Below, piece by piece: positions 14,607-50,806 of a DNA stretch of 64,000 nucleotides. The notes beneath the pieces were generated by a model. That model ran no database searches, was not told the DNA's origin, and was given only the letters and a program-made list of their open reading frames with translations. Every line of letters starts with the position of its first letter. Within the stretch, counting starts at the first letter, position 1. The stretch spans positions 1-64,000 of IMG/VR virus record IMGVR_UViG_3300020471_000004; one strand, 5' to 3'. The position numbers and the translations under genes are program-made.

Positions 14607-14936
14607 TTATCTTCTTTTAGGTTTAGGTAAACGTTGAAGCATCTGTATTTTGCGCTTGTACTCCATATAGAAAGAACGCGCTTCTTTACGTGCTTCTTGA
14701 ATCTCCTGAGGAGAGCCTTCACGATACTTAACTTTATCCAGGCGCGAAAGAATTTTAGAGCGCAAGTTACGAGCTTCACGCTGCATAACTGAATAACGAT
14801 CTTTTTTCTGGATACGCTTACGGTAAGGCCCCCGGCGACGGCGAGGTCGAAAGCGGCGCATACGTCTTTGTGCAGGGTCTACACCTAAATCTTTGTAGTC
14901 AACAGATTCAGATGAAAGGTCAAGATTGATTTTCAT
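14607..14936 (-). CDS. Arg-rich putative DNA-binding internal head protein
   Basis: MKINLDLSSES followed by RRMRRFRPRRRRGPYRKR; AAGGA SD. Confidence 0.65.
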   Translation of the reverse strand: MKINLDLSSESVDYKDLGVDPAQRRMRRFRPRRRRGPYRKRIQKKDRYSVMQREARNLRSKILSRLDKVKYREGSPQEIQEARKEARSFYMEYKRKIQMLQRLPKPKRR

Positions 14937-18746: not shown

Positions 18747-19826
18747 TTAGATACGCTTACCTTTAGCAACAGAGCGAACGTTACCTACCAAGAAGCTAAT
18801 GCTTTGGCTAATTAACCAACCTTTGTTAGTTTCGCCTTGGTTAGCACCGTCAGTAGGAGTAGAACGGATACCGCGAGTCGAGAACGCTGCGTGGTGTTCA
18901 GGATCAGATACAACGTAGATTTCACCTTTATCAAGAACGCGTTGGTTCTCAGGACGGAAACCGTCGGTCATAAGTTCCATACCGATTAGTGTACCGATTT
19001 TACCGTTCATTACTAGGTCGTACTTAGATACTGGATCTAAGAAAGCGCTGAACTCGCTGTTACCGATAATGTCTTTCCAGAAGTCATTAGAGATAATCGC
19101 TTTAGTAGCTGGTAAGTTCCAACCAGATACTTGTTCAGAAAGTGACGCAAGCATTTTAGGCGTAAGTTCACCAGAAATGTATGAAATGTCGTTAACGCGA
19201 CCAACAGTTGCATCAACAGCACGTTTCCAAATGCGGTCTTCTGCAACCATTACTGCTTCCATTGCCTGGTCGCGAATGTCACGTAGAAGGTCGCCAGATG
19301 ATTGGTCAAGCTCAAGTTGCGATACGCGTACCGCAGACTTAACTTCGTATTCAGCAGGTGTGAACTGACGGTCACGAATTAGCTGGTAACCCATCTGAGT
19401 TGGTGATGTTGATACAACAGCTTGAACTTCGTGGCGGAACATAGGGATACGCGGGTATTCACCTTGTTTAAGGTTGTTACCTACTGCTAGGTTACGCATG
19501 AAGCCTGCACGGTCTGCTTGCTCAACGATACGATCAGAAATCGCAGCACCAAGAGCAGCCCAGTCATCTAGGTTAGAGTTAGCTTGAGCGATCAAATCAC
19601 GGAATTCCTCAGAAGTCATTGCGTCTTCTTGAGGTGCTTCAACGATTTGTCCAGCAGAAGCCATTGACATTAACTTACCAATGTTTTGCATTAGTTCGTT
19701 ACGGTCGTGTGCGTTGATTTCACCGTTTGATGAAAGCGCCTTCATGCCGGAACCAGGTAAAATTAGGTTGTCTAGCGATTCGCCGTTTGCCATTACGTGG
19801 CGGAAGTTACGAGCAGAATGTTTCAT
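18747..19826 (-). CDS. major capsid protein (HK97-fold)
   Basis: 359 aa in scaffold-decoration-MCP order, GGAG SD. R.GFMR.L..L.QG, A.EA.MV.EDR and G.IGTL.G..L pattern typical of jumbo myovirus capsids. Confidence 0.75.
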   Translation of the reverse strand: MKHSARNFRHVMANGESLDNLILPGSGMKALSSNGEINAHDRNELMQNIGKLMSMASAGQIVEAPQEDAMTSEEFRDLIAQANSNLDDWAALGAAISDRIVEQADRAGFMRNLAVGNNLKQGEYPRIPMFRHEVQAVVSTSPTQMGYQLIRDRQFTPAEYEVKSAVRVSQLELDQSSGDLLRDIRDQAMEAVMVAEDRIWKRAVDATVGRVNDISYISGELTPKMLASLSEQVSGWNLPATKAIISNDFWKDIIGNSEFSAFLDPVSKYDLVMNGKIGTLIGMELMTDGFRPENQRVLDKGEIYVVSDPEHHAAFSTRGIRSTPTDGANQGETNKGWLISQSISFLVGNVRSVAKGKRI

Positions 19827-19876
19827 ATGAGAATTACTCCAAAATTGGGTTCAATAATGTTTCTTGAAGACCGGTA

Positions 19877-20587
19877 TTACTGAACCGATTCAAGAGTAAG
19901 GAAGGCATTGCCTGCAACAGGAGCAGAAACAACAACCCAGTTAGTTAGTTTTGTACCAGTGCCGCCAACAGTTACAGTACCGTTAGCGCCTAGGCTTGGG
20001 TGCATTGCGCCTGACCAGTCAACAGATGCATCGAAGTTTGAAATCGATAGACGAGTACAAGAAATCAAACGACCTGTACGACCTAGCGCAGCGCCTGGTG
20101 AACCACCGATAGGGCCGTCACCGTGGTAAAGTGAAGCTTCCGATGCAGAAGGCTCGTAAGTGTACTGGATGTAAACTGATTGACCTTCAACGTCTGTGTG
20201 GAACAATAGACGGTCACGATCAATGACAACTTTACCTTCGTTACCAGAGCCAGTAGGTGCAGTGCTACCAGTTGAAATATCGCCAGAAGCAACAACAGAA
20301 CCGTCTAGCTTGATAAGGAAGTTAGAAGGATCTGGAGTGTGACCCATTGCGAAAGCGCCGTTAGTAACAGTACCTTTGTCAATTGCAGGTAGCTGACCAA
20401 CAGGCATTGCTGTGTTGATAGAGAAGCCTGCAAATACTTCGTCGGCTGCGCCAGTTGAAAGACCTAAAAGGTTCTTGCCGTCAACGTTTTTGAAAACAAG
20501 AGCCATACCTTCATCGTTAATTTGTTCGCCAGGTACGTGATCACCTTCAGCAGTTTTAACGATCATAGTGTTTGAATATTGAATCAT
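19877..20587 (-). CDS. putative head decoration/cement protein
   Basis: 236 aa Gly/Ser/Thr-rich beta protein between scaffold and MCP; FAGFS and C-terminal V.SAP....FL motifs. Confidence 0.55.
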   Translation of the reverse strand: MIQYSNTMIVKTAEGDHVPGEQINDEGMALVFKNVDGKNLLGLSTGAADEVFAGFSINTAMPVGQLPAIDKGTVTNGAFAMGHTPDPSNFLIKLDGSVVASGDISTGSTAPTGSGNEGKVVIDRDRLLFHTDVEGQSVYIQYTYEPSASEASLYHGDGPIGGSPGAALGRTGRLISCTRLSISNFDASVDWSGAMHPSLGANGTVTVGGTGTKLTNWVVVSAPVAGNAFLTLESVQ

Positions 20588-20619
20588 TTTTAATTCTCCG
20601 ATATATCCCGAGCGTTACC

Positions 20620-22599
20620 TTAGAAGGATTTCATTGCTCTAGAAAGTTTTGATTGGAAGTCAGAAGTTGAAACCGCAGTTGATTGCGACTCCAAAGTTTT
20701 TTCTTTTGGTACAACACGAGGTTGTAAACGTTGCTCTACAGAACTAACAGATTCCTGTCCGTCTTTACGAGCAAAAGAACTAGCAGCAACCATTTCGGCA
20801 ACTTCGTTTTGGAAGTCAGCGGACTTGCTGATAAGTTCCATCGTCTGGTCAACCAACAGCTTGTTGAATGCACCTGCGTTAGCTTCAAACACGTTATCAA
20901 TAAGCTCACGAGCATTATCAATACCTGCAGCCTTCAAGGTACTGGCCAAGCTTGAAATGATTGGGTTAGACTTTCCACGGAACACACCGTTATTCAGTCC
21001 CATGATAGAAGTAGCAAGGGCAGCACCCAGGCGTTCCATCAGTTTAGCATCGCGGTCTTTCTGGGCTTGTTCGTAGCCTGCAATTTTTGCATCCGCTTGT
21101 GCAACGATTTCTTTAGAGATAACCGTTTGCATTGTTTGTTCGTCAAAAGCAATTGACTCGAAACCGAACTGTTTAAGACCTGACTCTACGCCATCGTTAG
21201 CGATTGCTTTTAAGCAAGCTTGGCGGTAAGTAGGTTGATTAAAGATGCCACGTAGATTACCTTCGACATTTGACTCTGATGCAACTGCAACAGGAGTAGC
21301 GCCATGGAAAGCAACCCAACGGTTTTCACCAGCAACAACAGATACATTAGCTAGGCTAACTTGGTCTGCTTGTAAACCGCCTTCGGTAGAAGATGCAACC
21401 GCAGTCATAACGTCAAGAGAAGCAGAAACAGATACAGAGTCAGATTCAAGCTCTTCATCGTCATCGTCATCTTCTTCATCTTCTTCGTCATCTAGACCAT
21501 CAACGTCTTCGTCTTCGTCAGAGTCATCTTCGTCAGAGTCATCTTCGTCTTCGTCAGAGTCATCTTCGTCTTCGTCTTCGTCTTCGTCTTCGTCTTCGTC
21601 AGAAGAAGAGATAACTTCGAAATCATCGTCCAGGTCATCGAACTCGTCATCGTCCAGGTCCGAATCAATGTCGTCAAGGTCGTCAAGGTCGTCATCGTCA
21701 TCTAGATCCATATCCATGTCGTCATCCAACATAATATCATCTAGGTCATCGTCTTCATCCATAAGAAGATCATCGTCCATGTCCATAGAGGCATGTTCAA
21801 GTTCATCTAAAACTTCTGGATCGACAACGGCGGTAGAACAGCTAGGGCACACTGTAATGTCTTCGCTAGAAGAAAGAACGTGCATACCGCATTCTTCTGA
21901 ATCAGCACAAACAAAGTAATGCGCATCAGTTCCGAAACGGTCAGCAGCATCTTGCACTGCACTAGAGTTAGACTCTAATTCCTGCGCTGCAACTTCTTCA
22001 CCGTAGAAAGGACTGTAGTGAACAGAACCGCTAGAGTTAGAAATAAAGCTAACTTGGTTTTCGGTGTCTTCGTAAGCAGAAACAGGAGAATCGCCTGCTA
22101 GAATAGCCAGGTAGTCTTCTTTGGCTTCTTCAAAAGAAGAGGCAACGACAACGATACCTTGCTCGCCTTCAAGCTCTTGAACAAGAGCGCTTTCAGACTC
22201 TAGCTCGTCTTCTAAATCGCGGTCGAAATCTACATCGGTACTGCACGAAGGACAGTTAGATACAGACTCGCAAGCATCTGCGATAATGTGCGTGTTACAT
22301 TCAGAACACATGGTGTAATGAACTGACACTTGGTCTTCTTGGTCGGCACTGCTGGTAACTTCGAGATCAGTATCTAAAACCTTCATTGAGTCTCTGTTAC
22401 CAGACAGAGGATTCAAAAAAGATTTATGCGCACCAGCAACAGTAGCGATAGCAAAAGAACCGTCGGCAGAAGAAAGAACTTCTAGGGACTCTTGTTTAGC
22501 AACCATTGCGTAGTTACGGATAGCTTGTTCTCGGGTACCTGCAGTAACAACAATACCGCCAAAGCTAGGCTGAGTCGGTGATTTTTGTTTTACTGTCAT
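20620..22599 (-). CDS. putative prohead scaffold/core protein
   Basis: 659 aa, very acidic with a D/E tract of about 110 aa, two repeated Cys-containing modules, many S-x-S sites; first gene of the head operon with GAGGAG SD. Confidence 0.65.
   Translation of the reverse strand: MTVKQKSPTQPSFGGIVVTAGTREQAIRNYAMVAKQESLEVLSSADGSFAIATVAGAHKSFLNPLSGNRDSMKVLDTDLEVTSSADQEDQVSVHYTMCSECNTHIIADACESVSNCPSCSTDVDFDRDLEDELESESALVQELEGEQGIVVVASSFEEAKEDYLAILAGDSPVSAYEDTENQVSFISNSSGSVHYSPFYGEEVAAQELESNSSAVQDAADRFGTDAHYFVCADSEECGMHVLSSSEDITVCPSCSTAVVDPEVLDELEHASMDMDDDLLMDEDDDLDDIMLDDDMDMDLDDDDDLDDLDDIDSDLDDDEFDDLDDDFEVISSSDEDEDEDEDEDEDDSDEDEDDSDEDDSDEDEDVDGLDDEEDEEDDDDDEELESDSVSVSASLDVMTAVASSTEGGLQADQVSLANVSVVAGENRWVAFHGATPVAVASESNVEGNLRGIFNQPTYRQACLKAIANDGVESGLKQFGFESIAFDEQTMQTVISKEIVAQADAKIAGYEQAQKDRDAKLMERLGAALATSIMGLNNGVFRGKSNPIISSLASTLKAAGIDNARELIDNVFEANAGAFNKLLVDQTMELISKSADFQNEVAEMVAASSFARKDGQESVSSVEQRLQPRVVPKEKTLESQSTAVSTSDFQSKLSRAMKSF
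21563..21600. repeat. (tcttcg)x6 in-frame microsatellite encoding (ED)n
   Basis: Read directly; part of the larger D/E low-complexity tract at about 21450-21790. Confidence 0.85.
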
Positions 22600-22907: not shown

Positions 22908-24278
22908 TTACTTTGCATCTAAGTCAAGCGAGTAGTAGTCTACTAGTTTGCCTTTAAGTTCTGCGGATACTCCTGATGAAGGCACATCATAGGAAACAAA
23001 CTTAACGCCTCTACCGTAAGCTTTGGTCACAGAAGCTTTCCACTCATTGTAGCTTTGACCTTTATTCTGGCTAGGGTTATCTAGGCGCGAGCTTTTGCCT
23101 GTATTCTTTGTGTCTGGACTACTGCTTTTTGTGCCTGAACGTTTTTTAGCCTGTTCGACTTTTATTTGGCGACTAGTAGGTGTTTTTTCTATAAGCTTTT
23201 CTGCTTTTCTAAGATCCCTTTGCAAAGGACGTATCTCGGCATTTAAGTCTCTAGCCTGTTGGGCTAATTCTTTTTTCTTTTCCTTGTTATCTGTGTTGTC
23301 CATGCGCTGCTTTATGCGCTCTACTTTTTGCTGCAACTTAACTATGTTCTTATACATTTTATAAGTATCAGGCGCTTTTACTGGAGCCTTAGGCTCCCTA
23401 GTTACTCGTGCTTTGCGTGTCTTAGAAGCAGTTTCATTAGGAGATTTCTTGCGTCCCTCAGGCACTTCTTCACCGTTCATAATACCTGCAATACGGCGTG
23501 CAGCTATACGAGGTCCTGCATAGTACTTGCGCATAGGTCCACCGCTAGCAGGCTGGTGGAATACATGCCAGCCAGGTGCAAGCATACCAGGTGAGCGTTT
23601 CTTGCGTCCCATTTTAGAACCTACGTTGCCTTTACCTCTAGCAGGAGCCGCCGATTCAGATTCAATACTTGATACTGAAATAAACGCTTCGTTGCCTCTA
23701 GAACCGTCACCGCGTGAGCTTCTACCGCGAGAATAGTCTACAAGGTCTTGAACAGCTAAAGGTATAGCACGTACATCTGAACATTCGCGGAAAGCAACGT
23801 GAACATTAGATTTAGTTAGTTCAAAAGAGTAGACACCGTCTTCAAAACCGTCATAGTTTATAGAGTAACCGCTAGGTAGCCGCGCTTGTTTAATAGCTTT
23901 ATAGGCGGCTTGGTTGCCAACGTTTGAATTTGAAGTGCTTTCTCTCTCAAAGTCTTCCTCAAAGCTTAGTGCCTCTGCTTCAAGGTCTGTAATAGACTCT
24001 GAGTAAGGACCGTCAGGGTCAATATCCCATAAACCGTCACTTGCTAGTGCCTCCATTTCCCGTTGTGCGAACAGGCGATTCTTCATGCTAGGGGTATACT
24101 TGGCTTCTTTAGATATGCGGAAAATACTAAATAGACCTGTACGGCTTTTTAATACGTAACGTCCTGGTTGAGCAAAAACTACTCGTGCTTTAGGCTTTAC
24201 TGTAGCAAGAGCCTTTTCAATAGTAGCAGGAATAGGGTGCTTAGAACGTGCGCTTTCTGAAAGTATTTGAATATACAT
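22908..24278 (-). CDS. basic multi-segment protein, tagged putative head cargo
   Basis: MYIQILSESA; internal ERESTS and IESESA sites; Lys/Arg-rich coiled coil. Confidence 0.7.
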   Translation of the reverse strand: MYIQILSESARSKHPIPATIEKALATVKPKARVVFAQPGRYVLKSRTGLFSIFRISKEAKYTPSMKNRLFAQREMEALASDGLWDIDPDGPYSESITDLEAEALSFEEDFERESTSNSNVGNQAAYKAIKQARLPSGYSINYDGFEDGVYSFELTKSNVHVAFRECSDVRAIPLAVQDLVDYSRGRSSRGDGSRGNEAFISVSSIESESAAPARGKGNVGSKMGRKKRSPGMLAPGWHVFHQPASGGPMRKYYAGPRIAARRIAGIMNGEEVPEGRKKSPNETASKTRKARVTREPKAPVKAPDTYKMYKNIVKLQQKVERIKQRMDNTDNKEKKKELAQQARDLNAEIRPLQRDLRKAEKLIEKTPTSRQIKVEQAKKRSGTKSSSPDTKNTGKSSRLDNPSQNKGQSYNEWKASVTKAYGRGVKFVSYDVPSSGVSAELKGKLVDYYSLDLDAK

Positions 24279-24293
24279 AGTTAATCCTTTGGT

Positions 24294-25271
24294 CTATTTA
24301 CTACGCTTAGTGCTTTTAGTGCTTTTAGTGCTTTTAGTACTACGGGTGCTTTTAGTACTACGCTCTTTGCGGGTTTTAGACTTAGGGCTTAAAGCATCAA
24401 TCTGTTTTTGGACTTTTTCTTGTAAAGCTTCCCACGCATCAACTGCCTTATCCATTTCTGCTTCAACCTTGTCATACTCTTTATTGAGTTTGTCCAGCTT
24501 TTGTTGAATTTCTTTTTTCTTAGAGCCTTCAGCGTCTCTGAGTTCGTACTCAAGATCATCAATATCATCGGCTAGGTCAATGCTTTTGTCTTCAAGCTCG
24601 GCGACCTTTTCAAACTCCTTGCTTGACTCAACACTTTGGCGCAATTCGTCTATTTGTTTTCTAGCTTTTTCTTTTTCTTCTTTTTCTTTGTACTTTTGAG
24701 GATTGTTGGCTTTATCGGCTTTCTCAAGTTCCTTGTGTTCAGCTTCAAGCTTCTTATATTTCTTTTCGAGCTTCTTCTTGGTCTTTTTAGCAGCAACTCT
24801 TTCTTCGTCTACTTCTTTTTTGTAATACTCGATTTCTTTTTTAGCGTCAGCCACTTCTCCCTTGGCGTATTCTATTTCACTTTCGTCTCCGTCCTCTTCG
24901 GCCTCTTCAAGCTCTTCTTGGGCATCTTCAAGACGTTCTTGGGCATCTTCTAACCTACGTTGGTTTTTAGTATCACCTTCTAGGGCATCTTCGGCTTCAT
25001 CTAACTCGAAACCAAGGTTTTCCATTTTAAGAGCCACAGAATCCAAGCGCTTTTCAATTGATTTAGCAGACTTATCTTTTGTAGTAGAAGCATTGTCCTT
25101 TTGAGCTTGCTTCTTGGTAGTGTTGTCACGTTCTGCCTTTGGTTTAGCTAAACGTTTGGCATGGCTGCTGTTCGGGTACTTTTTTAGGTATTTCTTTTTC
25201 TCAGAAGAACCTAATTTTGCAAACTGCTCAGCAGACAAGCCTGCACTTTCTGAATTAAGAGTAATAATCAT
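24294..25271 (-). CDS. K/E-rich coiled-coil protein, tagged putative head cargo
   Basis: MIITLNSESA; KKYLKKYPNSSHAK motif; (STK)n tail. Confidence 0.7.
   Translation of the reverse strand: MIITLNSESAGLSAEQFAKLGSSEKKKYLKKYPNSSHAKRLAKPKAERDNTTKKQAQKDNASTTKDKSAKSIEKRLDSVALKMENLGFELDEAEDALEGDTKNQRRLEDAQERLEDAQEELEEAEEDGDESEIEYAKGEVADAKKEIEYYKKEVDEERVAAKKTKKKLEKKYKKLEAEHKELEKADKANNPQKYKEKEEKEKARKQIDELRQSVESSKEFEKVAELEDKSIDLADDIDDLEYELRDAEGSKKKEIQQKLDKLNKEYDKVEAEMDKAVDAWEALQEKVQKQIDALSPKSKTRKERSTKSTRSTKSTKSTKSTKRSK
24307..24360. repeat. 9-nt tandem repeat (ttagtgctt-like, about 6 units) encoding an (ST[K/R])n tail
   Basis: Read directly. Confidence 0.8.
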
Positions 25272-25279
25272 GTTTTTTC

Positions 25280-25753
25280 CTAGATTGTTTCATACAAGCG
25301 TTTAAGACCAGCCATCTTTCCTGGGTAACCTTTACGCTGTAACAAATTAAAAAAGTCTACAGGCTTCATGTTGTGCAAGGGATTACTATCTCTAGCAGTA
25401 CCGCGCGGGTGAATATAGTCTTTGACAAATTCATCAAACTCTATTTCGTACTCTACCATACTGTCAACAAACTCCAAGAACTGTTCCCAAAGTTTATCTT
25501 CGTCAGGAGTATTCAGATCCACAAGTTCAAAGGATTTGACCTCGGCAATAGGTAACGCTCGGGGGTATGCCAGTATACCGTGCCTATAGTTTCGAGAGTC
25601 ACGAATACCTGCAAAGCGTTTATCTTTTGCAGCTTTTTCTGCATCGATAAACTCTACAGGCTGGGGGTTTGTAGGCTGTGCCCCTATAGAATAAGGTCTG
25701 AATTTCAGTCCGTAATAGAACTTTTGGTTACTTAATGAAATTAGAAGTTTCAT
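25280..25753 (-). CDS. DarA C-terminal-like domain protein, tagged putative head cargo
   Basis: YYGLKFRPYSIGAQP...RHGILAYPRALPIAEVKSFELV matches my recollection of the DarA_C (defence against restriction A) consensus; starts MKLLISLSN. Confidence 0.65.
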   Translation of the reverse strand: MKLLISLSNQKFYYGLKFRPYSIGAQPTNPQPVEFIDAEKAAKDKRFAGIRDSRNYRHGILAYPRALPIAEVKSFELVDLNTPDEDKLWEQFLEFVDSMVEYEIEFDEFVKDYIHPRGTARDSNPLHNMKPVDFFNLLQRKGYPGKMAGLKRLYETI

Positions 25754-25760
25754 AGATACC

Positions 25761-27434
25761 TCAAATAAGCTTTTCTATGTTAGCTGGCATTCTTAAACCT
25801 AGGCGTTCATAGAAGTCTGCCAAAATAGCAGGGTCAATATAGTTAGCAATAGCAGTAGATATAGTAAGCTTACCGTTATTAAAATGGCCAAGCTCTTTGG
25901 CTACTTTTTGTAAAGCACCTTTTAACCAAGTCTCTGCGTCTTTGTTAGTTACCTGGCGTTTACGAGTAAATAAAGGACACTTTTCAATAATATCTCTTGC
26001 TAGACGTGTACCTTTAAGAGTACGGAATTTGTGAGCAGTAACCCCTTCAGGTAACATAGACTTCAAATATTTGTTTACAGCATTGGCTGTTATACGTCTG
26101 TTACCGAAAGTAAATAGAGGGTCTTTGCGCTTCTTGCCTTCGCTAAGTTGGTCAAGCAGTTCTATAATCAATTTGTTTGTGACAGAATTAGGTTTAAGCA
26201 CATGCTTTTGGACCTGTGCTTTCTTGGCTTCGTACTTTATTTCTCGGTTCTGACCTTTCTTGTAATAGTGACCTGATTGCAGTACAGTCAAACCGTATGT
26301 GGTCTTATCACCTGTCTTGCCTTCACGGGTACCTATACGCGCACTGGTTTGGTACATAACTTCTATAACAAGACACAGCAAGCCTTCTTTGGTTGATATG
26401 CCTTCTGATTTTAGTTTCTGCAACCAACGTCTTCTTACACCAGGCGCTACTTTTTCAAATTCTTCTACAATCTTAAACTTTTTGCTACGTTGCTTAGAGT
26501 TCCACCTTTCGGTGTATACCTTTAGATAGTTTTCAGCAGCAGGGGCCTTATATTCTAAAACATAGGCGTTATCTTTTTTAGGATCGTAGTTAGGATTCAT
26601 GCGAACATCGCCTGCTATACCTTTATTGCTTAACAACAAACCTTTTGAGGTATAGTAAGAAAGAGTATCGTCAATGTAACCAACAAACTGTTCAGGTAGA
26701 TTGTGATGGCGTATGCCTGCATCTTTGATAGCATCAATTACTTCACGGATGTCCAGATACGGCTTACCTGATTGGCGTACATAGTTTACAACAAAGTTTT
26801 TCCATGCTTTATTTACTTCTAGGCTAGCTTTTCGGAATTCAACATAGACAGGATTGTCTTTGTGTTTCTTGCGGAGTTCTTGACTTAGGTGGATAGTGCC
26901 GTCACCACCTAACTTGGTGCTAAGTTTAGAAACCTTTTTAAGTAAACTATCTTGGTCACTTACTTCTAGTTCAAACAGACTTGAAAGAGCTACATCGTTT
27001 AAGTCACTTACTTTGGTCTTTAGAACGTTAATCGCATTCTGCCTAGAAGTTTCTTTAGGAGACGTAGCAATTGTGTAGAACTTTTTGATTATGTCTAGTC
27101 CTGACCTAGATATAAGAGTTTCGTTCTCTATTTTAGCACGTACCTTTTTGTCTCTTACCTGCTTGGCTACTTCATACGCAGAACCTAGAAAGTCTTCGTC
27201 CTCTTCGTGTAAGGTATACCCTTTTAAGAAAAGGCTTGTCATTTCATCGTAAGCTTTTAGGTTAAACTTGTAGTGGGCCATAAACTCACGCCCTTGCTTA
27301 ACCCACTCACGGATGTCGCCAGCTAGGTTATGAGGGAATTTGTATTCAGGACTATCTGAATATGCGACAAGCAGCACCACTTTTGTAAATGCCGTTGCTA
27401 TGTCAGAATTAATTTTTGATAAAGATACTAACAT
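25761..27434 (-). CDS. type IB DNA topoisomerase with long N-terminal extension
   Basis: Catalytic pentad R (SARIG), K (YEAKK), R (AHKFRT), H (ELGH), Y (ANYIDP). Start MLVSLSK at 27434 inferred from the TAATG overlap with the upstream stop. Confidence 0.88.
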   Translation of the reverse strand: MLVSLSKINSDIATAFTKVVLLVAYSDSPEYKFPHNLAGDIREWVKQGREFMAHYKFNLKAYDEMTSLFLKGYTLHEEDEDFLGSAYEVAKQVRDKKVRAKIENETLISRSGLDIIKKFYTIATSPKETSRQNAINVLKTKVSDLNDVALSSLFELEVSDQDSLLKKVSKLSTKLGGDGTIHLSQELRKKHKDNPVYVEFRKASLEVNKAWKNFVVNYVRQSGKPYLDIREVIDAIKDAGIRHHNLPEQFVGYIDDTLSYYTSKGLLLSNKGIAGDVRMNPNYDPKKDNAYVLEYKAPAAENYLKVYTERWNSKQRSKKFKIVEEFEKVAPGVRRRWLQKLKSEGISTKEGLLCLVIEVMYQTSARIGTREGKTGDKTTYGLTVLQSGHYYKKGQNREIKYEAKKAQVQKHVLKPNSVTNKLIIELLDQLSEGKKRKDPLFTFGNRRITANAVNKYLKSMLPEGVTAHKFRTLKGTRLARDIIEKCPLFTRKRQVTNKDAETWLKGALQKVAKELGHFNNGKLTISTAIANYIDPAILADFYERLGLRMPANIEKLI

Positions 27435-27874
27435 TATTCTACCATATGGGCCGGAGCTTGCTTTAACCAAGCTATTGCTTCGTCTTGGCTATCAAAAGAT
27501 TTAAAATTGATACCTGACTCGTTAAATACACGCTCTATTTGGATTCTTGAATTCTTAGACATTTGAGGATCGAAAATAACAGCAACAAAACAAGGATAAT
27601 CACGAGTGCTATTTAACCATTTACGAAAGCGAACGAATTCTTTAAATTTTGTTTCGGCATCTGTACTGGACACAGTGCCTTTATCCGCGTATATGCAGTA
27701 CTTCCAATTTGTATCTCTGCTTTGCGATATAACCTTATTTATTCCATCGATTATACCACAAGCATTATCTATTCCAATAGTTCTTAGAAGTACAAGGGTA
27801 ACTATGCTAGATAGTTCCCTGTAACACACAGCGTAAGTCCCTTTAGGGCAGCTTATTGCTGCATCGTCTTGCAT
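27434..27874 (-). CDS. STAS/SpoIIAA-like protein
   Basis: Alpha/beta pattern with VAVIF and C-terminal FDSQDEAIAWL. Confidence 0.55.
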   Translation of the reverse strand: MQDDAAISCPKGTYAVCYRELSSIVTLVLLRTIGIDNACGIIDGINKVISQSRDTNWKYCIYADKGTVSSTDAETKFKEFVRFRKWLNSTRDYPCFVAVIFDPQMSKNSRIQIERVFNESGINFKSFDSQDEAIAWLKQAPAHMVE

Positions 27875-27880
27875 AGTGCC

Positions 27881-28819
27881 TCACATTGATTTGTAGCTAC
27901 CTGAATACTGACCGTCAACTAGGTATTGGTTAACAAAATATTTTTCAGCTATTTCCCAACCTACAGGGGTAGTAAATCCTCTAACAGATTGACCGTGAAC
28001 CATAGCTTCTACCAGTATAGCAAAAGCTTCATCCCACCAAGGGTTAGCATACCCAGGGTGGTTGAATTGGTCTTTGTGTAGGCGCTTGGCAGCTACTTGC
28101 TTCTTGAACTTTATTACATCGCTATTCTTCAACACATTCTTTATAGCATAGTGCGCAAGTTCGTGAGTTAGAACCTGTGCAATACCGTCTACAGAAAGGC
28201 TTCCGAATATACGAGTTAACTGACCTGGGTTCAGTATAATATAAATATCATACGTACCTCGAGTACGGTTCATGCTGTGAGCAATACAGCTACCTATCTC
28301 GTTAGAAATGCCTAAGCTGATTGGGTACTTGAACTTTATTTTAGTACCTAATCGACCTAGAGCAATTTCTATGTTTCGTCTAATGCTACCGCTTGCAGGC
28401 AATACAGTACCTACGAATATAGAAGTAGGTTTCTGTATAAACTGAAAGTTAACTTTAGCTGAGCCTGCAATAGTAGGTGCTACCTTTTTAGGTGACGGAG
28501 CAGTCACCTTAGGTTTAGGTTTTATATCAGATGCAGATTTAAAAGTTTCATCAAAAGATGAACTCCCTGCCAGCACGTCTTTACCTTGTATTTTGCCTAA
28601 ATAAGGCTTAGACGTGGTTACCAGCTCTCTTGCTTTCTGCTCACTAATAGGAACTAAAGCAGCTACTTGGTTATCAACCAAAATAAACTGGTCTTTGTTC
28701 TTGACCAGACCGTATACGGCCCTGCCTTCTAAATTAATTCGAGTAGTAGCACCGTCAACACTGATAGGGTTGCCTAAATACCTATACCAACGCCCAGCAT
28801 GAAGTACATCAATTTTCAT
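27881..28819 (-). CDS. zincin-like metallopeptidase with N-terminal shared beta domain
   Basis: VLTHELAHY (HExxH) plus downstream DEAFA third-ligand motif. Confidence 0.7.
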   Translation of the reverse strand: MKIDVLHAGRWYRYLGNPISVDGATTRINLEGRAVYGLVKNKDQFILVDNQVAALVPISEQKARELVTTSKPYLGKIQGKDVLAGSSSFDETFKSASDIKPKPKVTAPSPKKVAPTIAGSAKVNFQFIQKPTSIFVGTVLPASGSIRRNIEIALGRLGTKIKFKYPISLGISNEIGSCIAHSMNRTRGTYDIYIILNPGQLTRIFGSLSVDGIAQVLTHELAHYAIKNVLKNSDVIKFKKQVAAKRLHKDQFNHPGYANPWWDEAFAILVEAMVHGQSVRGFTTPVGWEIAEKYFVNQYLVDGQYSGSYKSM

Positions 28820-28834
28820 GGCTTTTCCTTAATC

Positions 28835-30763
28835 TTACGACCAGATACTTACGATACCTGACTGTCTAAAACCTTCTTTGTCAACAACTACTCGGAACTC
28901 TGCTGAACGAGAGATAGGCGAGTAGTAACCAAGTATTTCGCCACTTCCGCCTAAGCCAGTTACAGTTACAGACCCTTCTTCCTCAGCATCGATCCAGTCA
29001 GGCAGATTGTCTTCTTCTTTCAAGGTAGAAGGTAACGAATCAATAAGTTTTTTGATCTTGGCGTAACCTAGACCTTTAACACTGGAGCCTGCACCTTCTT
29101 CTGCTTCATTCATTATCTTTCTACCTAAGGTAGGAGTAATTACAGAGTCCAGCAGTTTAAAAGTATTTTTCGGCAATACATTAGTATAACCTCTTGCTAG
29201 AGAGACCCCTGACTTTAAGCTTATTGAATCAACCTTTAAGCTCTCTACAAAAGCAGTTGCTTTTTTGATTCCAGCAGGAGTAAAGTTAAACTTGTTACCA
29301 GCAACGTAAATGCCTTTTAACCCTTTAGCAGCACCTGGTTTAGGCAAAATTACGTAAGGGCTATCTCCGTCGATATTTACTTTCCAAGTATAGCGCTCTA
29401 CCTCTCTGCTATTGTAATAAGATACATTACCTGTGCCGAAAACAGTAGAAAGAAGTTTTATGGTATCTTCCTCAGAAGTGCTACCTCTTTGCTTAGAGGT
29501 AGCCAGAGGCTTTTTTGGAGAGTTTATTATTCCCTCTTCTCTTAAAGTAACTAGTAGTTTTTTAACAGAGTTTACTAGGCCTTTATCAAACACTCTTATT
29601 AAAGAAGGGCTAGAGTCATTTAATAAAAGAGCCGCTACTACCTGAGCGTACGGGTCATAGTTTTCTAGATCGAACAGTATGCTCTTGGCCCGTTTTTGAG
29701 TAAGGCCGGTGTCAGTCATTAGTTTTGTAAGACCTTTTTCTACAGAAGTACGACTACCGTTAGTAAGCATAGCTCTTAAGGGCTTAACGTCAGCAGGGCT
29801 TGCATCGTTGCCTCGAGAATCAGTAAGACTAACAGTATCATCACCATCCAGGTATTCGTAAACGTCACTTATTTTAGAATTTGTTTTGTCTGCTATAACA
29901 ATAGCTCTTAAGGTTTCTTTGACTGACTCTTGGTTAAAAGTAAGTCCCTTACCGATAGAAGCCTCTAATACCTTCTGGTACTTGGGACTTAGTTTCTTTG
30001 CTACTAGACCCGCGACAGCCCCTACCTTTACAGGCGCAGAACCAGGCTTTTGTGTTCGCATATTAGGAGTAATAGTAGCACCAGAAAGCTTTTGTAAAGC
30101 AGCGTTAGGCTTGATACTTTTGATGTTTGACATGATTGCAGAGAAGGTTTTGGCACTAGCCAGCTTTTTGACATTGGCAACCATCTTCTTACCGGCAGCA
30201 GAAGCAGCGTACTTTTCTAACGCTGCGGTATCTTTGGTTTTTAGAGCACCGATTAGGTAATCGATACCCTTGGTGTTTAATTGTTTTTCTTTAGAGTAGT
30301 CTTCTAGCTTAGACAAGATAGAAACACCTTTTGATCCGAAAAGGATCTTGGCATTTTCTTGTTGCTTTTTAGAAGCCGATTCAGACTCTAGTCCGTCTTC
30401 AAGGCTTGCAGAAGCAGAAGCTTTTACTTCCATCATAAACTTAGAACCTGGCCCTCCGACCGGTTTAACTCCACCTACTTTTAAACCTGCATCTTTCAAA
30501 GCTGCCTTAAAAGAACGTGAATAGTTTTTCTCGTTCTGGAAGTCGGCACTCATAGTTTTAGGATGGAAAGCAGATCGAACAACTGCGCCTTTTTCACCAG
30601 GCGATACACTAAACATAGCAGTAGGTATGCCTGCATCTTTCAAAGCAGCACGTACTTGTTTACCAATACGGCCTGCTTCGGCTTTTGTGATAGTATTGGA
30701 AGCTTTTTTAACCGAGCCGGAAAGAGCCGGCATGTCTTGGGTGTTAGAAACATCAATCTTCAT
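28835..30763 (-). CDS. large Lys/Ala/Ser-rich protein, putative head cargo
   Basis: MKIDVS..ALSGS; internal KASASASLEDGLESESAS. Confidence 0.7.
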   Translation of the reverse strand: MKIDVSNTQDMPALSGSVKKASNTITKAEAGRIGKQVRAALKDAGIPTAMFSVSPGEKGAVVRSAFHPKTMSADFQNEKNYSRSFKAALKDAGLKVGGVKPVGGPGSKFMMEVKASASASLEDGLESESASKKQQENAKILFGSKGVSILSKLEDYSKEKQLNTKGIDYLIGALKTKDTAALEKYAASAAGKKMVANVKKLASAKTFSAIMSNIKSIKPNAALQKLSGATITPNMRTQKPGSAPVKVGAVAGLVAKKLSPKYQKVLEASIGKGLTFNQESVKETLRAIVIADKTNSKISDVYEYLDGDDTVSLTDSRGNDASPADVKPLRAMLTNGSRTSVEKGLTKLMTDTGLTQKRAKSILFDLENYDPYAQVVAALLLNDSSPSLIRVFDKGLVNSVKKLLVTLREEGIINSPKKPLATSKQRGSTSEEDTIKLLSTVFGTGNVSYYNSREVERYTWKVNIDGDSPYVILPKPGAAKGLKGIYVAGNKFNFTPAGIKKATAFVESLKVDSISLKSGVSLARGYTNVLPKNTFKLLDSVITPTLGRKIMNEAEEGAGSSVKGLGYAKIKKLIDSLPSTLKEEDNLPDWIDAEEEGSVTVTGLGGSGEILGYYSPISRSAEFRVVVDKEGFRQSGIVSIWS

Positions 30764-30800
30764 AGTTTTATTTCCGTTGTTTATCTAGTTACTTTGTATA

Positions 30801-30829
30801 AGTATAGCAGAATTTTGCTATTATTTATA
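30801..30829 (-). promoter_or_regulatory. candidate promoter region (TATAAATA; palindrome; extended -10 TGcTATACT)
   Basis: Only sizeable gap in the cargo block; minus strand TATAAATA-atagcaaaattcTGcTATACT. Confidence 0.4.
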
Positions 30830-30862
30830 GACCGACTTTTGTACCTTAATGTTAAAGATAGG

Positions 30863-31411
30863 TTAACTCTTGTTTCGCGCTACCTTTAGTAAGGCTTTGG
30901 CAGATTGCTCCAACATTTTCAGTCGGTCAGCCTGTGTCAAGCCTAGGTGTTTGTTTTTAGAAAAACTAGCCTGCCAAGAAGCTAGAAAACTATTTGTAAG
31001 GTCTTCTTGGGCTTCTGATAGACGAAGTTTTTTATCTTGCTCAGCTTTGGCAGATTCTATGCCTGCTTTAAAGAAAGCAAGTATTGAATTCTTTCCTCTG
31101 GAAGATAGATAAGTATCTATGATTTCAAATAAATACTCGAAATCTTCACCCATCTCAAAGTAACGGTCTAATACAGTTTCGTTACGGTCAAGGTATTCTG
31201 AAATTTTAGGTACAGCAGTACGTAACTGGCGCATATTTGTAATGCGTAGCGTAGAGATAATTTCCTGTAGTCCTAATAAGAAGTTGCTTTCGTAAGCAGG
31301 AGTAAACCGTTTACCGCTATACATCATCAAGCTCATTATATTACACAGCTTGGCAACTTTAGGCTTTTCGAACAAGGAACTTATTGAACGCTTAGTTAAA
31401 TCAATTTTCAT
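30863..31411 (-). CDS. hypothetical helical protein, putative head cargo
   Basis: MKIDLTKRSISS; GAGG SD. Confidence 0.65.
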   Translation of the reverse strand: MKIDLTKRSISSLFEKPKVAKLCNIMSLMMYSGKRFTPAYESNFLLGLQEIISTLRITNMRQLRTAVPKISEYLDRNETVLDRYFEMGEDFEYLFEIIDTYLSSRGKNSILAFFKAGIESAKAEQDKKLRLSEAQEDLTNSFLASWQASFSKNKHLGLTQADRLKMLEQSAKALLKVARNKS

Positions 31412-31413
31412 AG

Positions 31414-32217
31414 TTACCTCATTACTGCCATGACTTGGTTATGGTTACTATGGTTTGAAACATAGGCAGGATCTTCTACAGCGCTGTTTTCAAAACCAGT
31501 TATTTGGTGCACATACCTGAAAGCGATCTGGTTTGCATCGTTTACATAAGTAGGCTTTTGTAGAACAGTATGACTACATACATTACGTAAATTATCTTTA
31601 TATACCGTATGTCCACAAATGCTACAGGTGTAAGCTTGATACCACATACCAATACTGAATGTATTTAGGTCCTCTGTTAGAATGCGGTTAGCAAGAACAG
31701 GGTCTTTGGTTCGGTCAAAAGCAAGTAACTGAATAATACGAGCATGGTTGCCACGGAACTGAGGTAACGACTTCATGTATACGTCAAGAATAACACCTTT
31801 AGCTTTGGTAATATCCTTGTTGTCATGCTCTTGGTGAGTAGGTTTTCCTTTCCACGTTTTGTATGCCAGCATACCTAAATCAGGACGAAAGCGTAGTGCC
31901 TCTTGAGTAGACAAACAATCACCGTTGGTGTTAGGTACGTCAGTTATAACACTAGGCACAGGCACCATCACGTAGTCACGAAGATTAGGGCTTATCTGAT
32001 AATGTTCAGATGCCATTGGTAACCAAGTGTTTGCATCTATTACCATGCTTTCTGAGGCGCCTGTTGCACTAGGCTTAAAAGTGATTTCGTTTGATTTACC
32101 AATGTCTTTTAACTCGATAGCTTTGTGGCGTACGTCACGTTTGGTAACATCGAAACTAGAGCTTTCAAAGCTGTTCTGTTCATTGGGAATAATAATGTCT
32201 TTTAAATCAAGTTTCAT
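31414..32217 (-). CDS. prohead maturation protease (HK97/assemblin superfamily) with Zn-ribbon insert
   Basis: NTNGD, GKPTHQEH (His), KGVILD, FSIGM (Ser), CSICG..CSH, FENSAVEDPA. Confidence 0.75.
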   Translation of the reverse strand: MKLDLKDIIIPNEQNSFESSSFDVTKRDVRHKAIELKDIGKSNEITFKPSATGASESMVIDANTWLPMASEHYQISPNLRDYVMVPVPSVITDVPNTNGDCLSTQEALRFRPDLGMLAYKTWKGKPTHQEHDNKDITKAKGVILDVYMKSLPQFRGNHARIIQLLAFDRTKDPVLANRILTEDLNTFSIGMWYQAYTCSICGHTVYKDNLRNVCSHTVLQKPTYVNDANQIAFRYVHQITGFENSAVEDPAYVSNHSNHNQVMAVMR

Positions 32218-32219
32218 AA

Positions 32220-33461
32220 TTAACCTACTCGGGTTACTTCTATAACTAACTGGTTATTAGCGTTACGACCTGCGTTAACGTTAATATCTTGAGTAGAAAC
32301 TCTGCCACCGCGCGAAGCACCTTTGTTTACGAAAGTGAAAGAACCTACTTCACCTTTCTCGAAATCAGGAGTTGGTTTTGACGTAAGAGAAGACAGACTG
32401 TTTGTACTAATAGCTTTGGCTACTTTCTTAGCTATAGCTGCACTAGTATTGTATTCAACAGAGAATGAAGTATTGCCTATACTATAAGAAGAAGGCAATC
32501 TTTTTGAATTGGTTATCTTTAGGTATAGCTGACCTTTGCCTTTTGAAAATCTGCCTGCACTTTGGCCTTTTCTGCTAGGTCTAGGCTTACGAGTAGTAGG
32601 ATCTCTGGTAATAGTTTCTTTACGAGCAGGCACATCGTAATCACCTAGTTCTACGTCACCGCTAGTTTGGGCATTACGTATAAGGTCTAGTGAGAAACGA
32701 GTAGGTTGCTTAGGTTCAAAAATTGAAGTGATAGCAAGAGGAGTCTGTTTGCCTGACTTGAGCATACTAGCAGCCTGTTTAGGTGTAACTCGGATCATGC
32801 GACCATCACCAAACGTGCCACCACGGCTCTTGAATGCAGTACCTTGCTTCCAGCCGTCTGTAGAAAAGGCAGGAGATGCAAAATCAATACCGTATTTAGA
32901 TTTGATAGAACTAACAAAGCCAAGTTTTTTGCTTTCAAGCAACGACACTAGGTCTTTTATCAAATCATTCAGGTTGAAAGGATAGCGCTGACCAGGTTTA
33001 AGCGTCTTCAAGAATTCTTCGGTTGCTGCCAAGTTAGAAAGAATTTGGACATTCTTTTTGGTCATGCTGGTACGAGTGTTTGCACCGAACAAGGCAATAG
33101 CCGCCAACTTAGCCAGATCCGCAGAGTTGTCTTGGGCAACCTTCTTGGGGCTAGGTTTGCGTGTAGGCTTTTTAGTACCAGTAGCTGCATCTTCCGATAA
33201 GATTTTATGGTCACGTTTAAGTTGGTTAAACTTGTTTCGCGTTATCTTGAACTTCCAGTACTTGTTTAGCTCCTCGTCAAAGTCAAACAGGAATATACCT
33301 TTAGGTGAATTAGAAAGGTAGAAAATATCGCCACGTCTTAGAGCCAGTTCGTGAGTAGCATCTTCTATTTCAATTTTCTTTTTAGCTTTCATCTGAATAG
33401 ACCCTTTAATAGGCGCTTTAACTTTAGTTGCAGATGAACTTTCTAGTAGATTTATTTTCAT
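32220..33461 (-). CDS. basic protein, tagged putative head cargo
   Basis: MKINLLESSSA; Lys-rich. Confidence 0.7.
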   Translation of the reverse strand: MKINLLESSSATKVKAPIKGSIQMKAKKKIEIEDATHELALRRGDIFYLSNSPKGIFLFDFDEELNKYWKFKITRNKFNQLKRDHKILSEDAATGTKKPTRKPSPKKVAQDNSADLAKLAAIALFGANTRTSMTKKNVQILSNLAATEEFLKTLKPGQRYPFNLNDLIKDLVSLLESKKLGFVSSIKSKYGIDFASPAFSTDGWKQGTAFKSRGGTFGDGRMIRVTPKQAASMLKSGKQTPLAITSIFEPKQPTRFSLDLIRNAQTSGDVELGDYDVPARKETITRDPTTRKPRPSRKGQSAGRFSKGKGQLYLKITNSKRLPSSYSIGNTSFSVEYNTSAAIAKKVAKAISTNSLSSLTSKPTPDFEKGEVGSFTFVNKGASRGGRVSTQDINVNAGRNANNQLVIEVTRVG

Positions 33462-48753: not shown

Positions 48754-48773
48754 TGTTATCTCCAAAAATTAAA

Positions 48774-49781: not shown

Positions 49782-49783
49782 AA

Positions 49784-50797: not shown

Positions 50798-50806
50798 TTC
50801 GTTCTC

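What the first reader, a model, noticed from the sequence alone, without database searches (positions are those of the whole stretch)
25280..25753. Stand-alone DarA-C-like domain carrying the tag
Seen: RP.SIGAQP / RHGI.AY.R.L...EV..FEL pattern directly after MKLLISLSN. Established: P1 DarA is head-packaged, proteolytically processed and part of an injected anti-restriction system. Inference: independent support that the tagged set is ejected, possibly with an anti-defence role. The domain call is from memory.
Basis: partly seen in the sequence, partly recalled or inferred. Interest (0 to 1): 0.6.

Follow-up and report, generated by a model that had tools for sequence, protein, structure and literature searches.

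The report
Tagged DarA-C domain phage head protein
A small jumbo-phage gene in the head-assembly cluster really does encode the C-terminal domain of the phage P1 anti-restriction protein DarA, behind a nine-residue N-terminal tag shared by about twenty other proteins, which probably sends it into the capsid; its function is still unknown.

Summary
Window 25280..25753 (minus strand) is a 157-aa gene under strong purifying selection. Residues 10-80 pass Pfam's own threshold for DarA_C (32 bits against 27). A profile of its relatives hits P1 DarA itself at residues 412-474. The AlphaFold model (pLDDT 93) shows a loose nine-residue N-terminal tag, a basic alpha/beta DarA_C domain and an acidic helical domain, with no solved structural relative.

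The tag is real. The ordered motif M-x-hydrophobic-x-hydrophobic-(S/N/D) starts about 20-24 of 271 genes, against about 6 expected from shuffled N-termini. Its codons vary, and it sits in front of unrelated domains. The gene lies between the prohead protease and the major capsid protein, and this order is kept in divergent relatives. One tag-bearing protein of the related phage PaBG is a proven virion protein.

The P1 DarA parts known to bind capsid and DNA (residues 70-382) are absent here. The shared region was not resolved in the P1 structure and has no known function. Stand-alone DarA_C genes elsewhere sit in non-structural accessory regions.

The best reading is a tag-delivered internal head protein (about 0.6), possibly anti-defence (about 0.35). 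It is a new variant of a known kind.

The parts
25280..25753 (-). Whole gene: 157-aa protein (18.4 kDa) plus stop codon
   Evidence: ORF list and sequence. Purifying selection against the 89%-identical relative: pN 0.073, pS 0.78.
25759..25762 (-). GAGG ribosome-binding site, 6 nt upstream of the ATG, overlapping the end of the upstream topoisomerase-like gene
   Evidence: Upstream sequence printed.
25727..25753 (-). N-terminal tag, residues 1-9 (MKLLISLSN)
   Evidence: Lies outside the fold: mean pLDDT 62 for residues 1-10 against 88-98 elsewhere. Pattern conserved in orthologues. Motif enriched at gene starts genome-wide.
25514..25726 (-). DarA_C domain, residues 10-80; small basic alpha/beta domain (pI 9.6)
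   Evidence: Pfam PF18789, 32 bits against cut-off 27. Genome scan gives the same coordinates. Profile hit to P1 DarA 412-474. Predicted-structure matches to DarA_C proteins.
25283..25510 (-). C-terminal helical domain, residues 82-157; acidic (pI 4.9), no Pfam family
   Evidence: Helices 85-101, 106-114, 131-140 and 147-156 at pLDDT 95 or more. Found together with DarA_C in a subset of relatives, including inside 584-1026-aa proteins. Only weak helix-turn-helix-like matches, Z 4.4 or less.
22908..30763 (-). Context: tightly packed seven-gene block of mostly tag-bearing genes holding the focal gene. Members: 642 aa, 312-aa HExxH protein, 146 aa (no tag), topoisomerase-IB-like 25761..27434, the DarA_C gene, 325 aa, 456 aa
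   Evidence: ORFs and N-termini. Pfam and PHROG hits. Mostly basic proteins, pI 9.6-9.8.
31414..32217 (-). Context: head maturation protease upstream of the block; its own N-terminus (MKLDLKD) resembles the tag
   Evidence: PHROG 18299, E=1.5e-92.
18747..22599 (-). Context: acidic 659-aa scaffold-like protein, 236-aa virion structural protein and major head protein, downstream of the block
   Evidence: PHROG 20988, 16710 and 2522.

Best explanation
The gene encodes a small internal head protein of a jumbo myovirus of the Lu11/PaBG/NCTB ('Lupandier') group. It has three modules. The first is a nine-residue N-terminal tag shared with about twenty otherwise unrelated proteins of the phage. The second is a basic DarA_C domain homologous to residues 412-474 of phage P1 DarA. 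The third is an acidic four-helix domain. INFERRED mechanism: the tag acts like the capsid-targeting sequence of T4 internal proteins or the N-terminus of P1 DarB. It would dock the protein onto the assembling prohead core, so that the protein is enclosed with the DNA and leaves with it at infection. Inside the new host the DarA_C module would then act as a binding module. Its conserved residues are two arginines and two tyrosines, with no catalytic-looking residues, so it probably binds DNA or a host protein, plausibly against a defence system. In effect the phage delivers as many separately tagged small proteins what other phages deliver as one giant 'polyvalent' DarA_N+DarA_C protein. SHOWN: the gene is real, the domain identity holds, the tag is modular and non-random, and the head-module context is conserved. 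INFERRED: packaging, ejection and any anti-defence activity.
For: Domain:
- Pfam DarA_C scores above its threshold.
- phmmer over 1.84 billion representatives returns 50 relatives. About 30 are stand-alone and about 20 are embedded in 584-1828-aa proteins. Of seven large ones scanned, five carry DarA_N, and one of those also InPase and ddrB-ParB.
- The family profile hits P1 DarA (PDB 9ukm chain I) at residues 412-474, E=2.8e-7.
- The nearest predicted structures are DarA_C proteins and 'antirestriction phage head protein DarA'.

Tag:
- It has low pLDDT and lies outside the fold.
- It is present on orthologues in related phages but absent from embedded domains and from unrelated stand-alone relatives.
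- The strict motif is found only at ORF starts.
- The position test gives p=1.8e-5, and the codons vary, so conservation is at protein level.
- No shuffle reaches the observed counts.
- It is attached to unrelated domains: topoisomerase IB, KMPT-N, NUDIX and DarA_C.

Context:
- The gene lies between the prohead protease and the major head protein.
- The same order is kept in phage NCTB, in the 239-kb relative L031, and in a divergent contig L024 whose capsid protein is 54% identical.
- The neighbours are mostly basic.

Experimental anchor:
- PaBG gp83 starts MLIKINLLEA, sits in the same block, and was identified in purified virions (PMC7412058 Table 1; exact mass match).

Precedents:
- T4 has a capsid-targeting sequence, and the first 30 residues of P1 DarB suffice for packaging (PMC9024508).
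- P1 Dar proteins are ejected with the DNA (PMC12810830).
Against: - There is no virion proteome for this phage or any DarA_C-bearing relative. PaBG and Lu11 lack DarA_C.
- PaBG gp83 is not homologous to any window protein, so it supports only the tag idea, with one protein.
- The P1 region homologous to this protein is the unresolved, functionless part of DarA.
- Some tagged genes lie far from the structural module, on the other strand at 110-127 kb.
- The focal tag is not followed by a glutamate, unlike 8 of 23 tags, so it may not be processed like a T4 capsid-targeting sequence.
- Other stand-alone DarA_C genes are in non-structural regions.
- No solved structure or known activity constrains what DarA_C does.
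Confidence: 0.55

Rival explanations
1. It is a packaged internal head protein whose job is structural. It would organise or neutralise the DNA, or help head assembly, as P1 DarA and Hdf affect head size. It would have no anti-defence activity of its own.
For: The gene sits in a head-module block of mostly basic proteins. The DarA_C half is basic, pI 9.6. In P1, DarA and Hdf contact DNA and the capsid and influence morphogenesis.
Against: The capsid- and DNA-binding parts of P1 DarA (residues 70-382) are not the part shared here. The gene is absent from PaBG and Lu11, which build similar heads, so it is not a core assembly component. DarA_C also occurs alone in non-structural accessory regions of other elements.
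Confidence: 0.2
2. It is not packaged. It would be a late-expressed cytoplasmic protein, and the shared N-terminus would serve another purpose: a degradation or translation signal, localisation to an assembly or replication site, or recognition by the phage protease.
For: Several tagged genes, such as a NUDIX enzyme at 126292..126759 and genes at 110-113 kb, lie outside the structural module on the other strand. There is no proteomic evidence for this phage. Stand-alone DarA_C genes elsewhere look like early or accessory genes.
Against: Thirteen of the 23 profile-scored tagged genes lie in the window's structural region (4-51 kb), most densely between the protease and the capsid gene. A tagged PaBG protein is in virions. 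Scattered genes with a shared targeting sequence are also the rule for T4 internal proteins and Alt (own knowledge). Conservation is at amino-acid level, not nucleotide level, which argues against an mRNA-level signal.
Confidence: 0.2
3. The DarA_C match is a false positive and the protein belongs to no known family.
For: The score is only 5 bits above the cut-off, and the family has no solved structure.
Against: The NCTB orthologue scores 43.9 bits. Single-sequence phmmer reaches DarA_N+DarA_C proteins at E=1.6e-11, exactly at their DarA_C position. The family profile reaches P1 DarA. Predicted-structure searches return DarA_C proteins. The family's near-invariant residues are all present.
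Confidence: 0.02

Closest known systems
Phage P1 DarA (639 aa; PDB 9ukm/9vz0), antirestriction head protein
   Same: It shares the DarA_C domain (P1 residues 412-474). Both are phage proteins encoded with or near head genes. P1 DarA is packaged, processed by the prohead protease and ejected with the DNA.
   Different: The protein here is a quarter of the size. It lacks DarA_N, the hexon-binding, alpha-helix and penton-binding domains (P1 residues 70-382), and the roughly 70-residue propeptide. It carries a nine-residue tag and a different helical C-terminal domain. No Hdf-type DarA_N protein is detected in the genome. The shared region has no known function in P1.
Polyvalent proteins of phages and conjugative elements (Iyer et al. 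2017, PMC5512222)
   Same: Many relatives of this domain are embedded in such proteins, together with DarA_N, InPase and ddrB-ParB. Neighbouring tagged genes carry domains resembling those of that repertoire, such as a zincin HExxH peptidase.
   Different: Here the domains are separate genes, each with its own short N-terminal tag, instead of one polypeptide that a built-in metallopeptidase is proposed to cut up.
T4 internal proteins (IPI, IPII, IPIII, Alt) with the capsid-targeting sequence; P1 DarB N-terminal packaging signal
   Same: A short N-terminal sequence is shared by unrelated proteins. The genes sit in variable cassettes near head genes. A glutamate often follows the tag (8 of 23), like T4 protease sites and the P1 capsid protein's E120|S121 site.
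   Different: There is no sequence similarity to the T4 or P1 signals. P1 Dar proteins share no consensus. The focal protein's tag has no glutamate. Function as a packaging signal is untested here.
Stand-alone DarA_C proteins in other phages and mobile elements (BFVD entries of 70-113 aa; P0014, P0023)
   Same: They have the same domain as a single-gene product.
   Different: They lack the tag and mostly lack the helical C-domain. They lie in accessory regions next to an integrase, a RES-Xre pair or a methylase, rather than in a head module.

Membership tests
Pfam DarA_C (PF18789) | HMM score at or above the curated gathering threshold (27 bits) | tested here: met
   32 bits, E=1.7e-7, residues 10-80 on profile positions 2-68 of 70. 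Six-frame scan gives 32.2 bits.
Pfam DarA_C (PF18789) | Family signature residues: (Y/W)YGL(R/K)xRP...GxxP, then R(H/F/Y)Gxxx(Y/F)...L...(F/Y)EL | tested here: met
   In a 52-sequence alignment, G15, P27, G59 and L77 are invariant, and Y14, L16, R19, P20, R57, Y63 and L67 are at least 90% conserved. All are present in the window protein.
Pfam DarA_C (PF18789) | Reciprocal relation to the founding protein, P1 DarA | tested here: met
   The family profile hits 9ukm_I 'Defense against restriction protein A' at residues 412-474, E=2.8e-7. phmmer hits proteins with DarA_N+DarA_C at their DarA_C site.
Pfam DarA_C (PF18789) | Same fold as other members | tested here: inconclusive
   No solved structure of the domain exists. 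Predicted models agree only moderately: BFVD DarA_C entries at rmsd 2.5-3.5 A over 69 columns, and Atlas DarA_C clusters at TM 0.45.
P1 DarA orthologue (full-length antirestriction head protein) | DarA_N domain and the capsid-binding region (P1 residues 70-382) | tested here: not met
   The protein has only 157 aa, and no DarA_N match is found in the protein or anywhere in the genome. The tool warned that its control genomes did not ring either.
P1 DarA orthologue (full-length antirestriction head protein) | Presence in virions, processing by the prohead protease, ejection with the DNA | not testable with these tools
   No proteome exists for this phage.
P1 DarA orthologue (full-length antirestriction head protein) | Protection against type I restriction | not testable with these tools
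   This needs plating assays.
Polyvalent proteins (Iyer et al. 2017) | Two to fifteen effector domains in one polypeptide | tested here: not met
   The protein has a single known domain plus one uncharacterised helical domain.
Polyvalent proteins (Iyer et al. 2017) | Linkage to phage packaging or late genes | tested here: met
   The gene lies between the prohead protease and the major head protein. This synteny is conserved.
Capsid-targeting-sequence internal proteins (T4 type) | Short N-terminal sequence shared by unrelated proteins of one phage | tested here: met
   23 of 271 genes score above the 99.5th percentile of internal-Met controls. Shuffle and position tests agree. The tag is attached to unrelated domains.
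Capsid-targeting-sequence internal proteins (T4 type) | Tag removed by the prohead protease at a glutamate | tested here: inconclusive
   8 of 23 tags are followed by E-(S/A/G), against 34 of 248 other genes (p=0.014). The focal protein and most of its orthologues have no glutamate there.
Capsid-targeting-sequence internal proteins (T4 type) | Tag necessary and sufficient for packaging | not testable with these tools
   The only indirect support is PaBG gp83, which is tagged and was found in virions.

The most novel reading that the evidence does not exclude
The NCTB-like branch of the Lupandier jumbo phages uses an undescribed, T4-like capsid-targeting system. A roughly nine-residue N-terminal tag (M-x-hydrophobic-x-hydrophobic-S/N/D, typified by MLISLS or MKINL) would load twenty or more separate cargo proteins into the head for injection. 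The cargo would include a topoisomerase-IB-like enzyme, a NUDIX hydrolase, zincin peptidases and this DarA_C protein. This would be a 'disassembled polyvalent protein', with the variable block between protease and scaffold genes serving as an exchangeable effector cassette.
Probability: 0.45. Interest if true: 0.7.

Novelty: new variant of a known kind. Interest (0 to 1): 0.5.

Why it matters
DarA_C is a widespread domain of phage and plasmid 'first-strike' proteins, and nobody knows its activity. Even the 2026 cryo-EM structure of P1 DarA could not resolve it. A compact 157-aa natural version that models with high confidence is a convenient object for structure and binding studies. It also gives a clean genetic handle, one small gene instead of a 640-1800-aa multidomain protein, for asking what the domain does.

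The shared tag, if it proves to be a packaging signal, would matter in two ways. It would explain how this jumbo-phage lineage chooses its injected cargo. It would also give a short portable sequence for loading foreign proteins into large capsids, as the T4 and P1 signals do.

Tried and rejected
- Megablast of the region against GenBank phages found nothing. tblastn found only phage NCTB.
- DarA_C is absent from PaBG and Lu11, so their virion data cannot speak for this protein.
- DarA_N is not detected in the genome.
- PaBG gp83 is not homologous to the 456-aa neighbour. It is a positional analogue only.
- Foldseek against PDB gave no match (best E=4.5). An exhaustive VIA-align search gave Z of 4.4 or less: ferredoxin/ACT/RRM-like for the N-domain and TetR/AraC helix-turn-helix-like for the C-domain. 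Both are below the level that means anything. I do not claim DNA binding from this.
- A language-model Atlas search of the C-domain gave no usable hit.
- PADLOC gave nothing for the focal protein and only coiled-coil noise for the neighbours.
- The sigma-70 promoter and terminator scan of 18-37.5 kb was no better than shuffles, so transcription units could not be defined.
- The tag profile trained on this genome is only weakly enriched in PaBG (13 vs 3.1 expected at the 99th percentile). The tag is best developed in the NCTB-like branch.
- My first attempt to match PaBG Table 1 masses used average masses and gave partly spurious hits. gp83 matches exactly with monoisotopic mass.
- Complex prediction was not run. 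No single partner for the tag is likely enough, and a negative result would be uninformative.
- No alternative genetic code was needed.

Full report
**1. What is there**

Window 25280..25753 on the minus strand is a 157-aa ORF. It begins MKLLISLSN. A GAGG ribosome-binding site lies 6 nt before the ATG. The gene is packed 7 nt after the upstream gene and 8 nt before the next one.

All genes of the window are on the minus strand. The window is the first 64 kb of a 232,692-bp virus record that is 93% complete.

Against the closest relative (89% aa identity), non-synonymous divergence is pN=0.073 while synonymous sites are saturated at pS=0.78. It is a real gene under purifying selection.

**2. 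Which phage**

The major head protein (18747..19826) is 72% identical to that of phage NCTB. It is 45-52% identical to those of Pseudomonas phages Lu11 and PaBG, Yersinia fHe-Yen9-02, and jumbo phages of Dickeya and Erwinia. Evseev et al. named this set the 'Lupandier group' (PMC7412058).

The focal gene lies in the head-assembly region. The elements, in order of transcription, are:
- head maturation protease, 31414..32217 (PHROG 18299, E=1.5e-92);
- a packed block of seven genes, 30763 down to 22908, that contains the focal gene;
- an acidic 659-aa scaffold-like protein;
- a 236-aa virion structural protein;
- the major head protein, followed by the tail sheath.

**3. Domain identity**

- Pfam DarA_C (PF18789) matches residues 10-80 at E=1.7e-7 and 32 bits, above the curated cut-off of 27. 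PHROG 1926, 'released from the phage upon host infection', matches the same stretch.
- It is the only DarA_C in the genome. The NCTB orthologue scores 43.9 bits.
- An exhaustive phmmer search of 1.84 billion representatives finds 50 relatives. About 30 are stand-alone proteins of 137-234 aa. About 20 are embedded in proteins of 584-1828 aa.
- Of seven large ones scanned, five carry DarA_N upstream of DarA_C. One of those five also has InPase and ddrB-ParB, making it a classical phage polyvalent protein (Iyer et al. 2017, PMC5512222).
- A profile of 52 relatives (A2) hits P1 DarA itself (PDB 9ukm chain I, 639 aa) at residues 412-474, E=2.8e-7.

Membership of the DarA_C family is therefore established.

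**4. Structure**

AlphaFold2 with alignment A2 gives mean pLDDT 93.1. The model has three parts:
- Residues 1-10 average pLDDT 62 and have no secondary structure. The tag is a loose N-terminal peptide and not part of the fold.
- Residues 11-81 form a small alpha/beta domain (DarA_C), which is basic with pI 9.6.
- Residues 82-157 form a four-helix domain, which is acidic with pI 4.9.

The helical domain accompanies DarA_C in a subset of relatives, including embedded ones.

No solved structure resembles the model. Foldseek's best E-value is 4.5, and exhaustive VIA-align gives Z of 4.4 or less. The nearest predicted structures are the NCTB orthologue, viral proteins annotated DarA_C, and an Atlas cluster named 'antirestriction phage head protein DarA'.

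The conserved residues are Y14, G15, L16, R19, P20, P27, R57, G59, Y63, L67 and L77. There is no conserved acidic, cysteine or serine residue, and the histidine of RHG is replaceable by F or Y. I infer a binding module, not an enzyme.

**5. The tag**

The first residues follow a pattern: M, any residue, hydrophobic, any residue, hydrophobic, then S/N/D. Typical forms are MLISLS, MKLLISLS and MKINL..SES. The evidence that this is non-random is as follows:
- A strict form occurs 9 times among all six-frame ORFs of at least 60 aa in the genome, each time within 18 residues of the ORF's beginning and never internally.
- A position matrix puts 23 of 271 genes above the 99.5th percentile of 1122 internal-methionine controls.
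- A pentapeptide test without the methionine finds 7 of 13 occurrences in the first 21 residues (p=1.8e-5). The codons for the tag residues differ among genes, so conservation is at protein level.
- When residues 2-12 of every N-terminus were shuffled, none of 2000 shuffles reached the observed counts: 6 vs 0.25, 24 vs 6.7, and 19 vs 5.4.

The tag precedes unrelated domains:
- DarA_C;
- a eukaryotic-type topoisomerase I core (25761..27434, PF01028, E=1e-19);
- KMPT-N (13917..14603 and 40585..42285);
- a NUDIX hydrolase (genome 126292..126759).

It is kept on DarA_C orthologues of related phages, for example MNILISVSA, MLISISL, MRILLSIS and MRVFVSIA. It is absent from embedded DarA_C domains and from stand-alone relatives in other elements. 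It also appears on neighbouring genes in NCTB, Lu11 and PaBG, although my matrix is only weakly enriched in PaBG.

Eight of 23 tags are followed directly by E-(S/A/G), against 34 of 248 other genes (p=0.014). This recalls glutamate-specific prohead proteases and the E120|S121 maturation site of the P1 capsid protein. The focal tag has no glutamate.

**6. Is the tagged set in the virion?**

This cannot be tested directly. The supporting evidence is:
- Tagged genes are concentrated between the protease and the capsid gene.
- Synteny of the DarA_C gene is conserved in NCTB, in the 239-kb relative L031, and in a divergent contig L024. In L024 the order is DarA_C, a small tagged protein, a scaffold-like protein, the structural protein, and a capsid protein that is 54% identical.
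- Gene content of this block varies between relatives, like the internal-protein cassettes of T4-type phages (own knowledge).
- PaBG gp83 begins MLIKINLLEA and lies between the topoisomerase-like gene and the scaffold-like gene. It was identified in purified virions (PMC7412058 Table 1). I confirmed the gene by an exact monoisotopic mass match.
- PaBG virion proteins are proteolytically processed.

The weaknesses are:
- gp83 is a single protein and is not homologous to window proteins.
- Some tagged genes lie elsewhere in the genome.
- PaBG and Lu11 have no DarA_C.

**7. What the P1 homology does and does not say**

In P1, 55 DarA-Hdf pairs line the inner capsid surface and touch the DNA. Residues 1-69 are thought to be removed by the protease Pro. 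Residues 70-382 bind hexon, Hdf and penton. Residues 383-639 could not be resolved, and all Dar proteins leave with the DNA (PMC12810830).

The homology found here lies in that unresolved part. No DarA_N is detected in this genome.

Loss of DarA or Hdf removes all other Dar proteins from P1 particles. The P1 phenotype therefore does not assign an activity to DarA_C.

Other stand-alone DarA_C genes sit among small accessory genes next to an integrase and a RES-Xre pair, or near a DNA methylase. That pattern fits a self-sufficient module acting in the recipient cell, but it shows that DarA_C alone does not imply packaging.

Packaging rests on context and tag, and an anti-defence role rests on association.

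**8. Verdict**

The best explanation is a tag-delivered internal head protein with a DarA_C binding module. My estimates are:

| Claim | Probability |
|---|---|
| Gene is real and the domain is DarA_C | about 0.95 |
| Protein is packaged in the capsid | about 0.6 |
| Protein has an anti-defence role | about 0.35 |

The rivals are a purely structural or DNA-organising internal protein (0.2), a non-packaged protein whose tag serves another purpose (0.2), and a false domain call (0.02).

The protein is a new variant of a known kind. It differs from other stand-alone DarA_C proteins by carrying a lineage-specific tag and an extra helical domain, inside a head module. I found no description of this tag in the searchable literature, and that library is incomplete.

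Noticed in passing
window 25761..27434 (-): A 557-aa protein with a eukaryotic-type topoisomerase IB catalytic core (PF01028, E=1e-19) lies directly upstream. Read from its internal ATG it begins with the tag (MLVSLSK). Homologues sit at the same place in NCTB (MLITLSR) and PaBG (gp084, annotated DNA topoisomerase I). A head-packaged topoisomerase would parallel the virion topoisomerase of poxviruses (own knowledge).
   Followed up: partly
window 27881..28819 (-), 13917..14603 (-), 40585..42285 (-): Three proteins share a KMPT-N-type N-terminal domain just after tag-like starts (PF20294: E=5.5e-9, 8.8e-12, and a weak 0.029). The 312-aa one also has an HELAH zincin motif and weak SprT-like similarity. 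PaBG has a 'SprT-like' gene in the same block.
   Followed up: partly
window 24294..25271 (-), 33458..34828 (-); genome 125559..126314 (+): A second shared element follows the tag in a subset of proteins: a W/K-rich stretch ending in (K/R)xY(I/L)(K/E)K(Y/H)P(N/K)Sx(Y/H)A. It is also seen in NCTB, Lu11, L024 and L031 homologues. It may be a longer targeting or DNA-binding module.
   Followed up: no
window 24294..25271 (-) and 14607..14936 (-): The 325-aa neighbour is a K/E-rich coiled-coil protein ending in a tandem S-T-K repeat. The 109-aa tagged protein has an arginine-rich run and pI 11.3. Most proteins of the block are basic (pI 9.6-9.8), as expected for DNA-associated internal head proteins.
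   Followed up: partly
window 20620..22599 (-): This 659-aa protein is annotated 'ATPase' in relatives (PHROG 20988) but has no ATPase domain in Pfam. It has two weak zinc-ribbon-like CxxC...CPxC units, a very long D/E tract (pI 4.05) and a conserved C-terminal third. Its position just before the capsid gene suggests a scaffold-like role.
   Followed up: no
window 22908..31411 compared with L031:5358-12153 and L001:7869-15443: Gene content between the prohead protease and the scaffold-like gene differs between close relatives. For example, the window has a 325-aa and a 456-aa gene where L031 has one 540-aa gene, and NCTB has two paralogous genes of 394 and 591 aa. The tags are kept throughout, so this looks like a variable cargo cassette.
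   Followed up: partly
genome 126292..126759 (+), 110694..111239 (+), 113105..113509 (+), 229271..230317 (-), outside the window: Tag-bearing genes occur outside the structural module, including a NUDIX hydrolase (PF00293, E=7e-9) and a DUF5754 protein. This either widens the cargo set or argues that the tag is not only a packaging signal.
   Followed up: partly
window 15511..17130 (-), 57317..58963 (-), 659..2314 (-): Several tail-sheath-like genes are present, which is the known two-sheath feature of the Lupandier group. Five paralogous genes of 335-402 aa lie at 46517..52269, with a tagged 144-aa gene (50807..51241) in their midst.
   Followed up: no
L025:1115-1651: A 178-aa DarA_C relative (P0027) on an unrelated-looking 4.8-kb metagenomic contig carries the same tag (MKIMISLSS). 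It lies beside genes for small membrane proteins and a lipoprotein-like product, not beside head genes. It is unclear whether that contig comes from a related phage.
   Followed up: no
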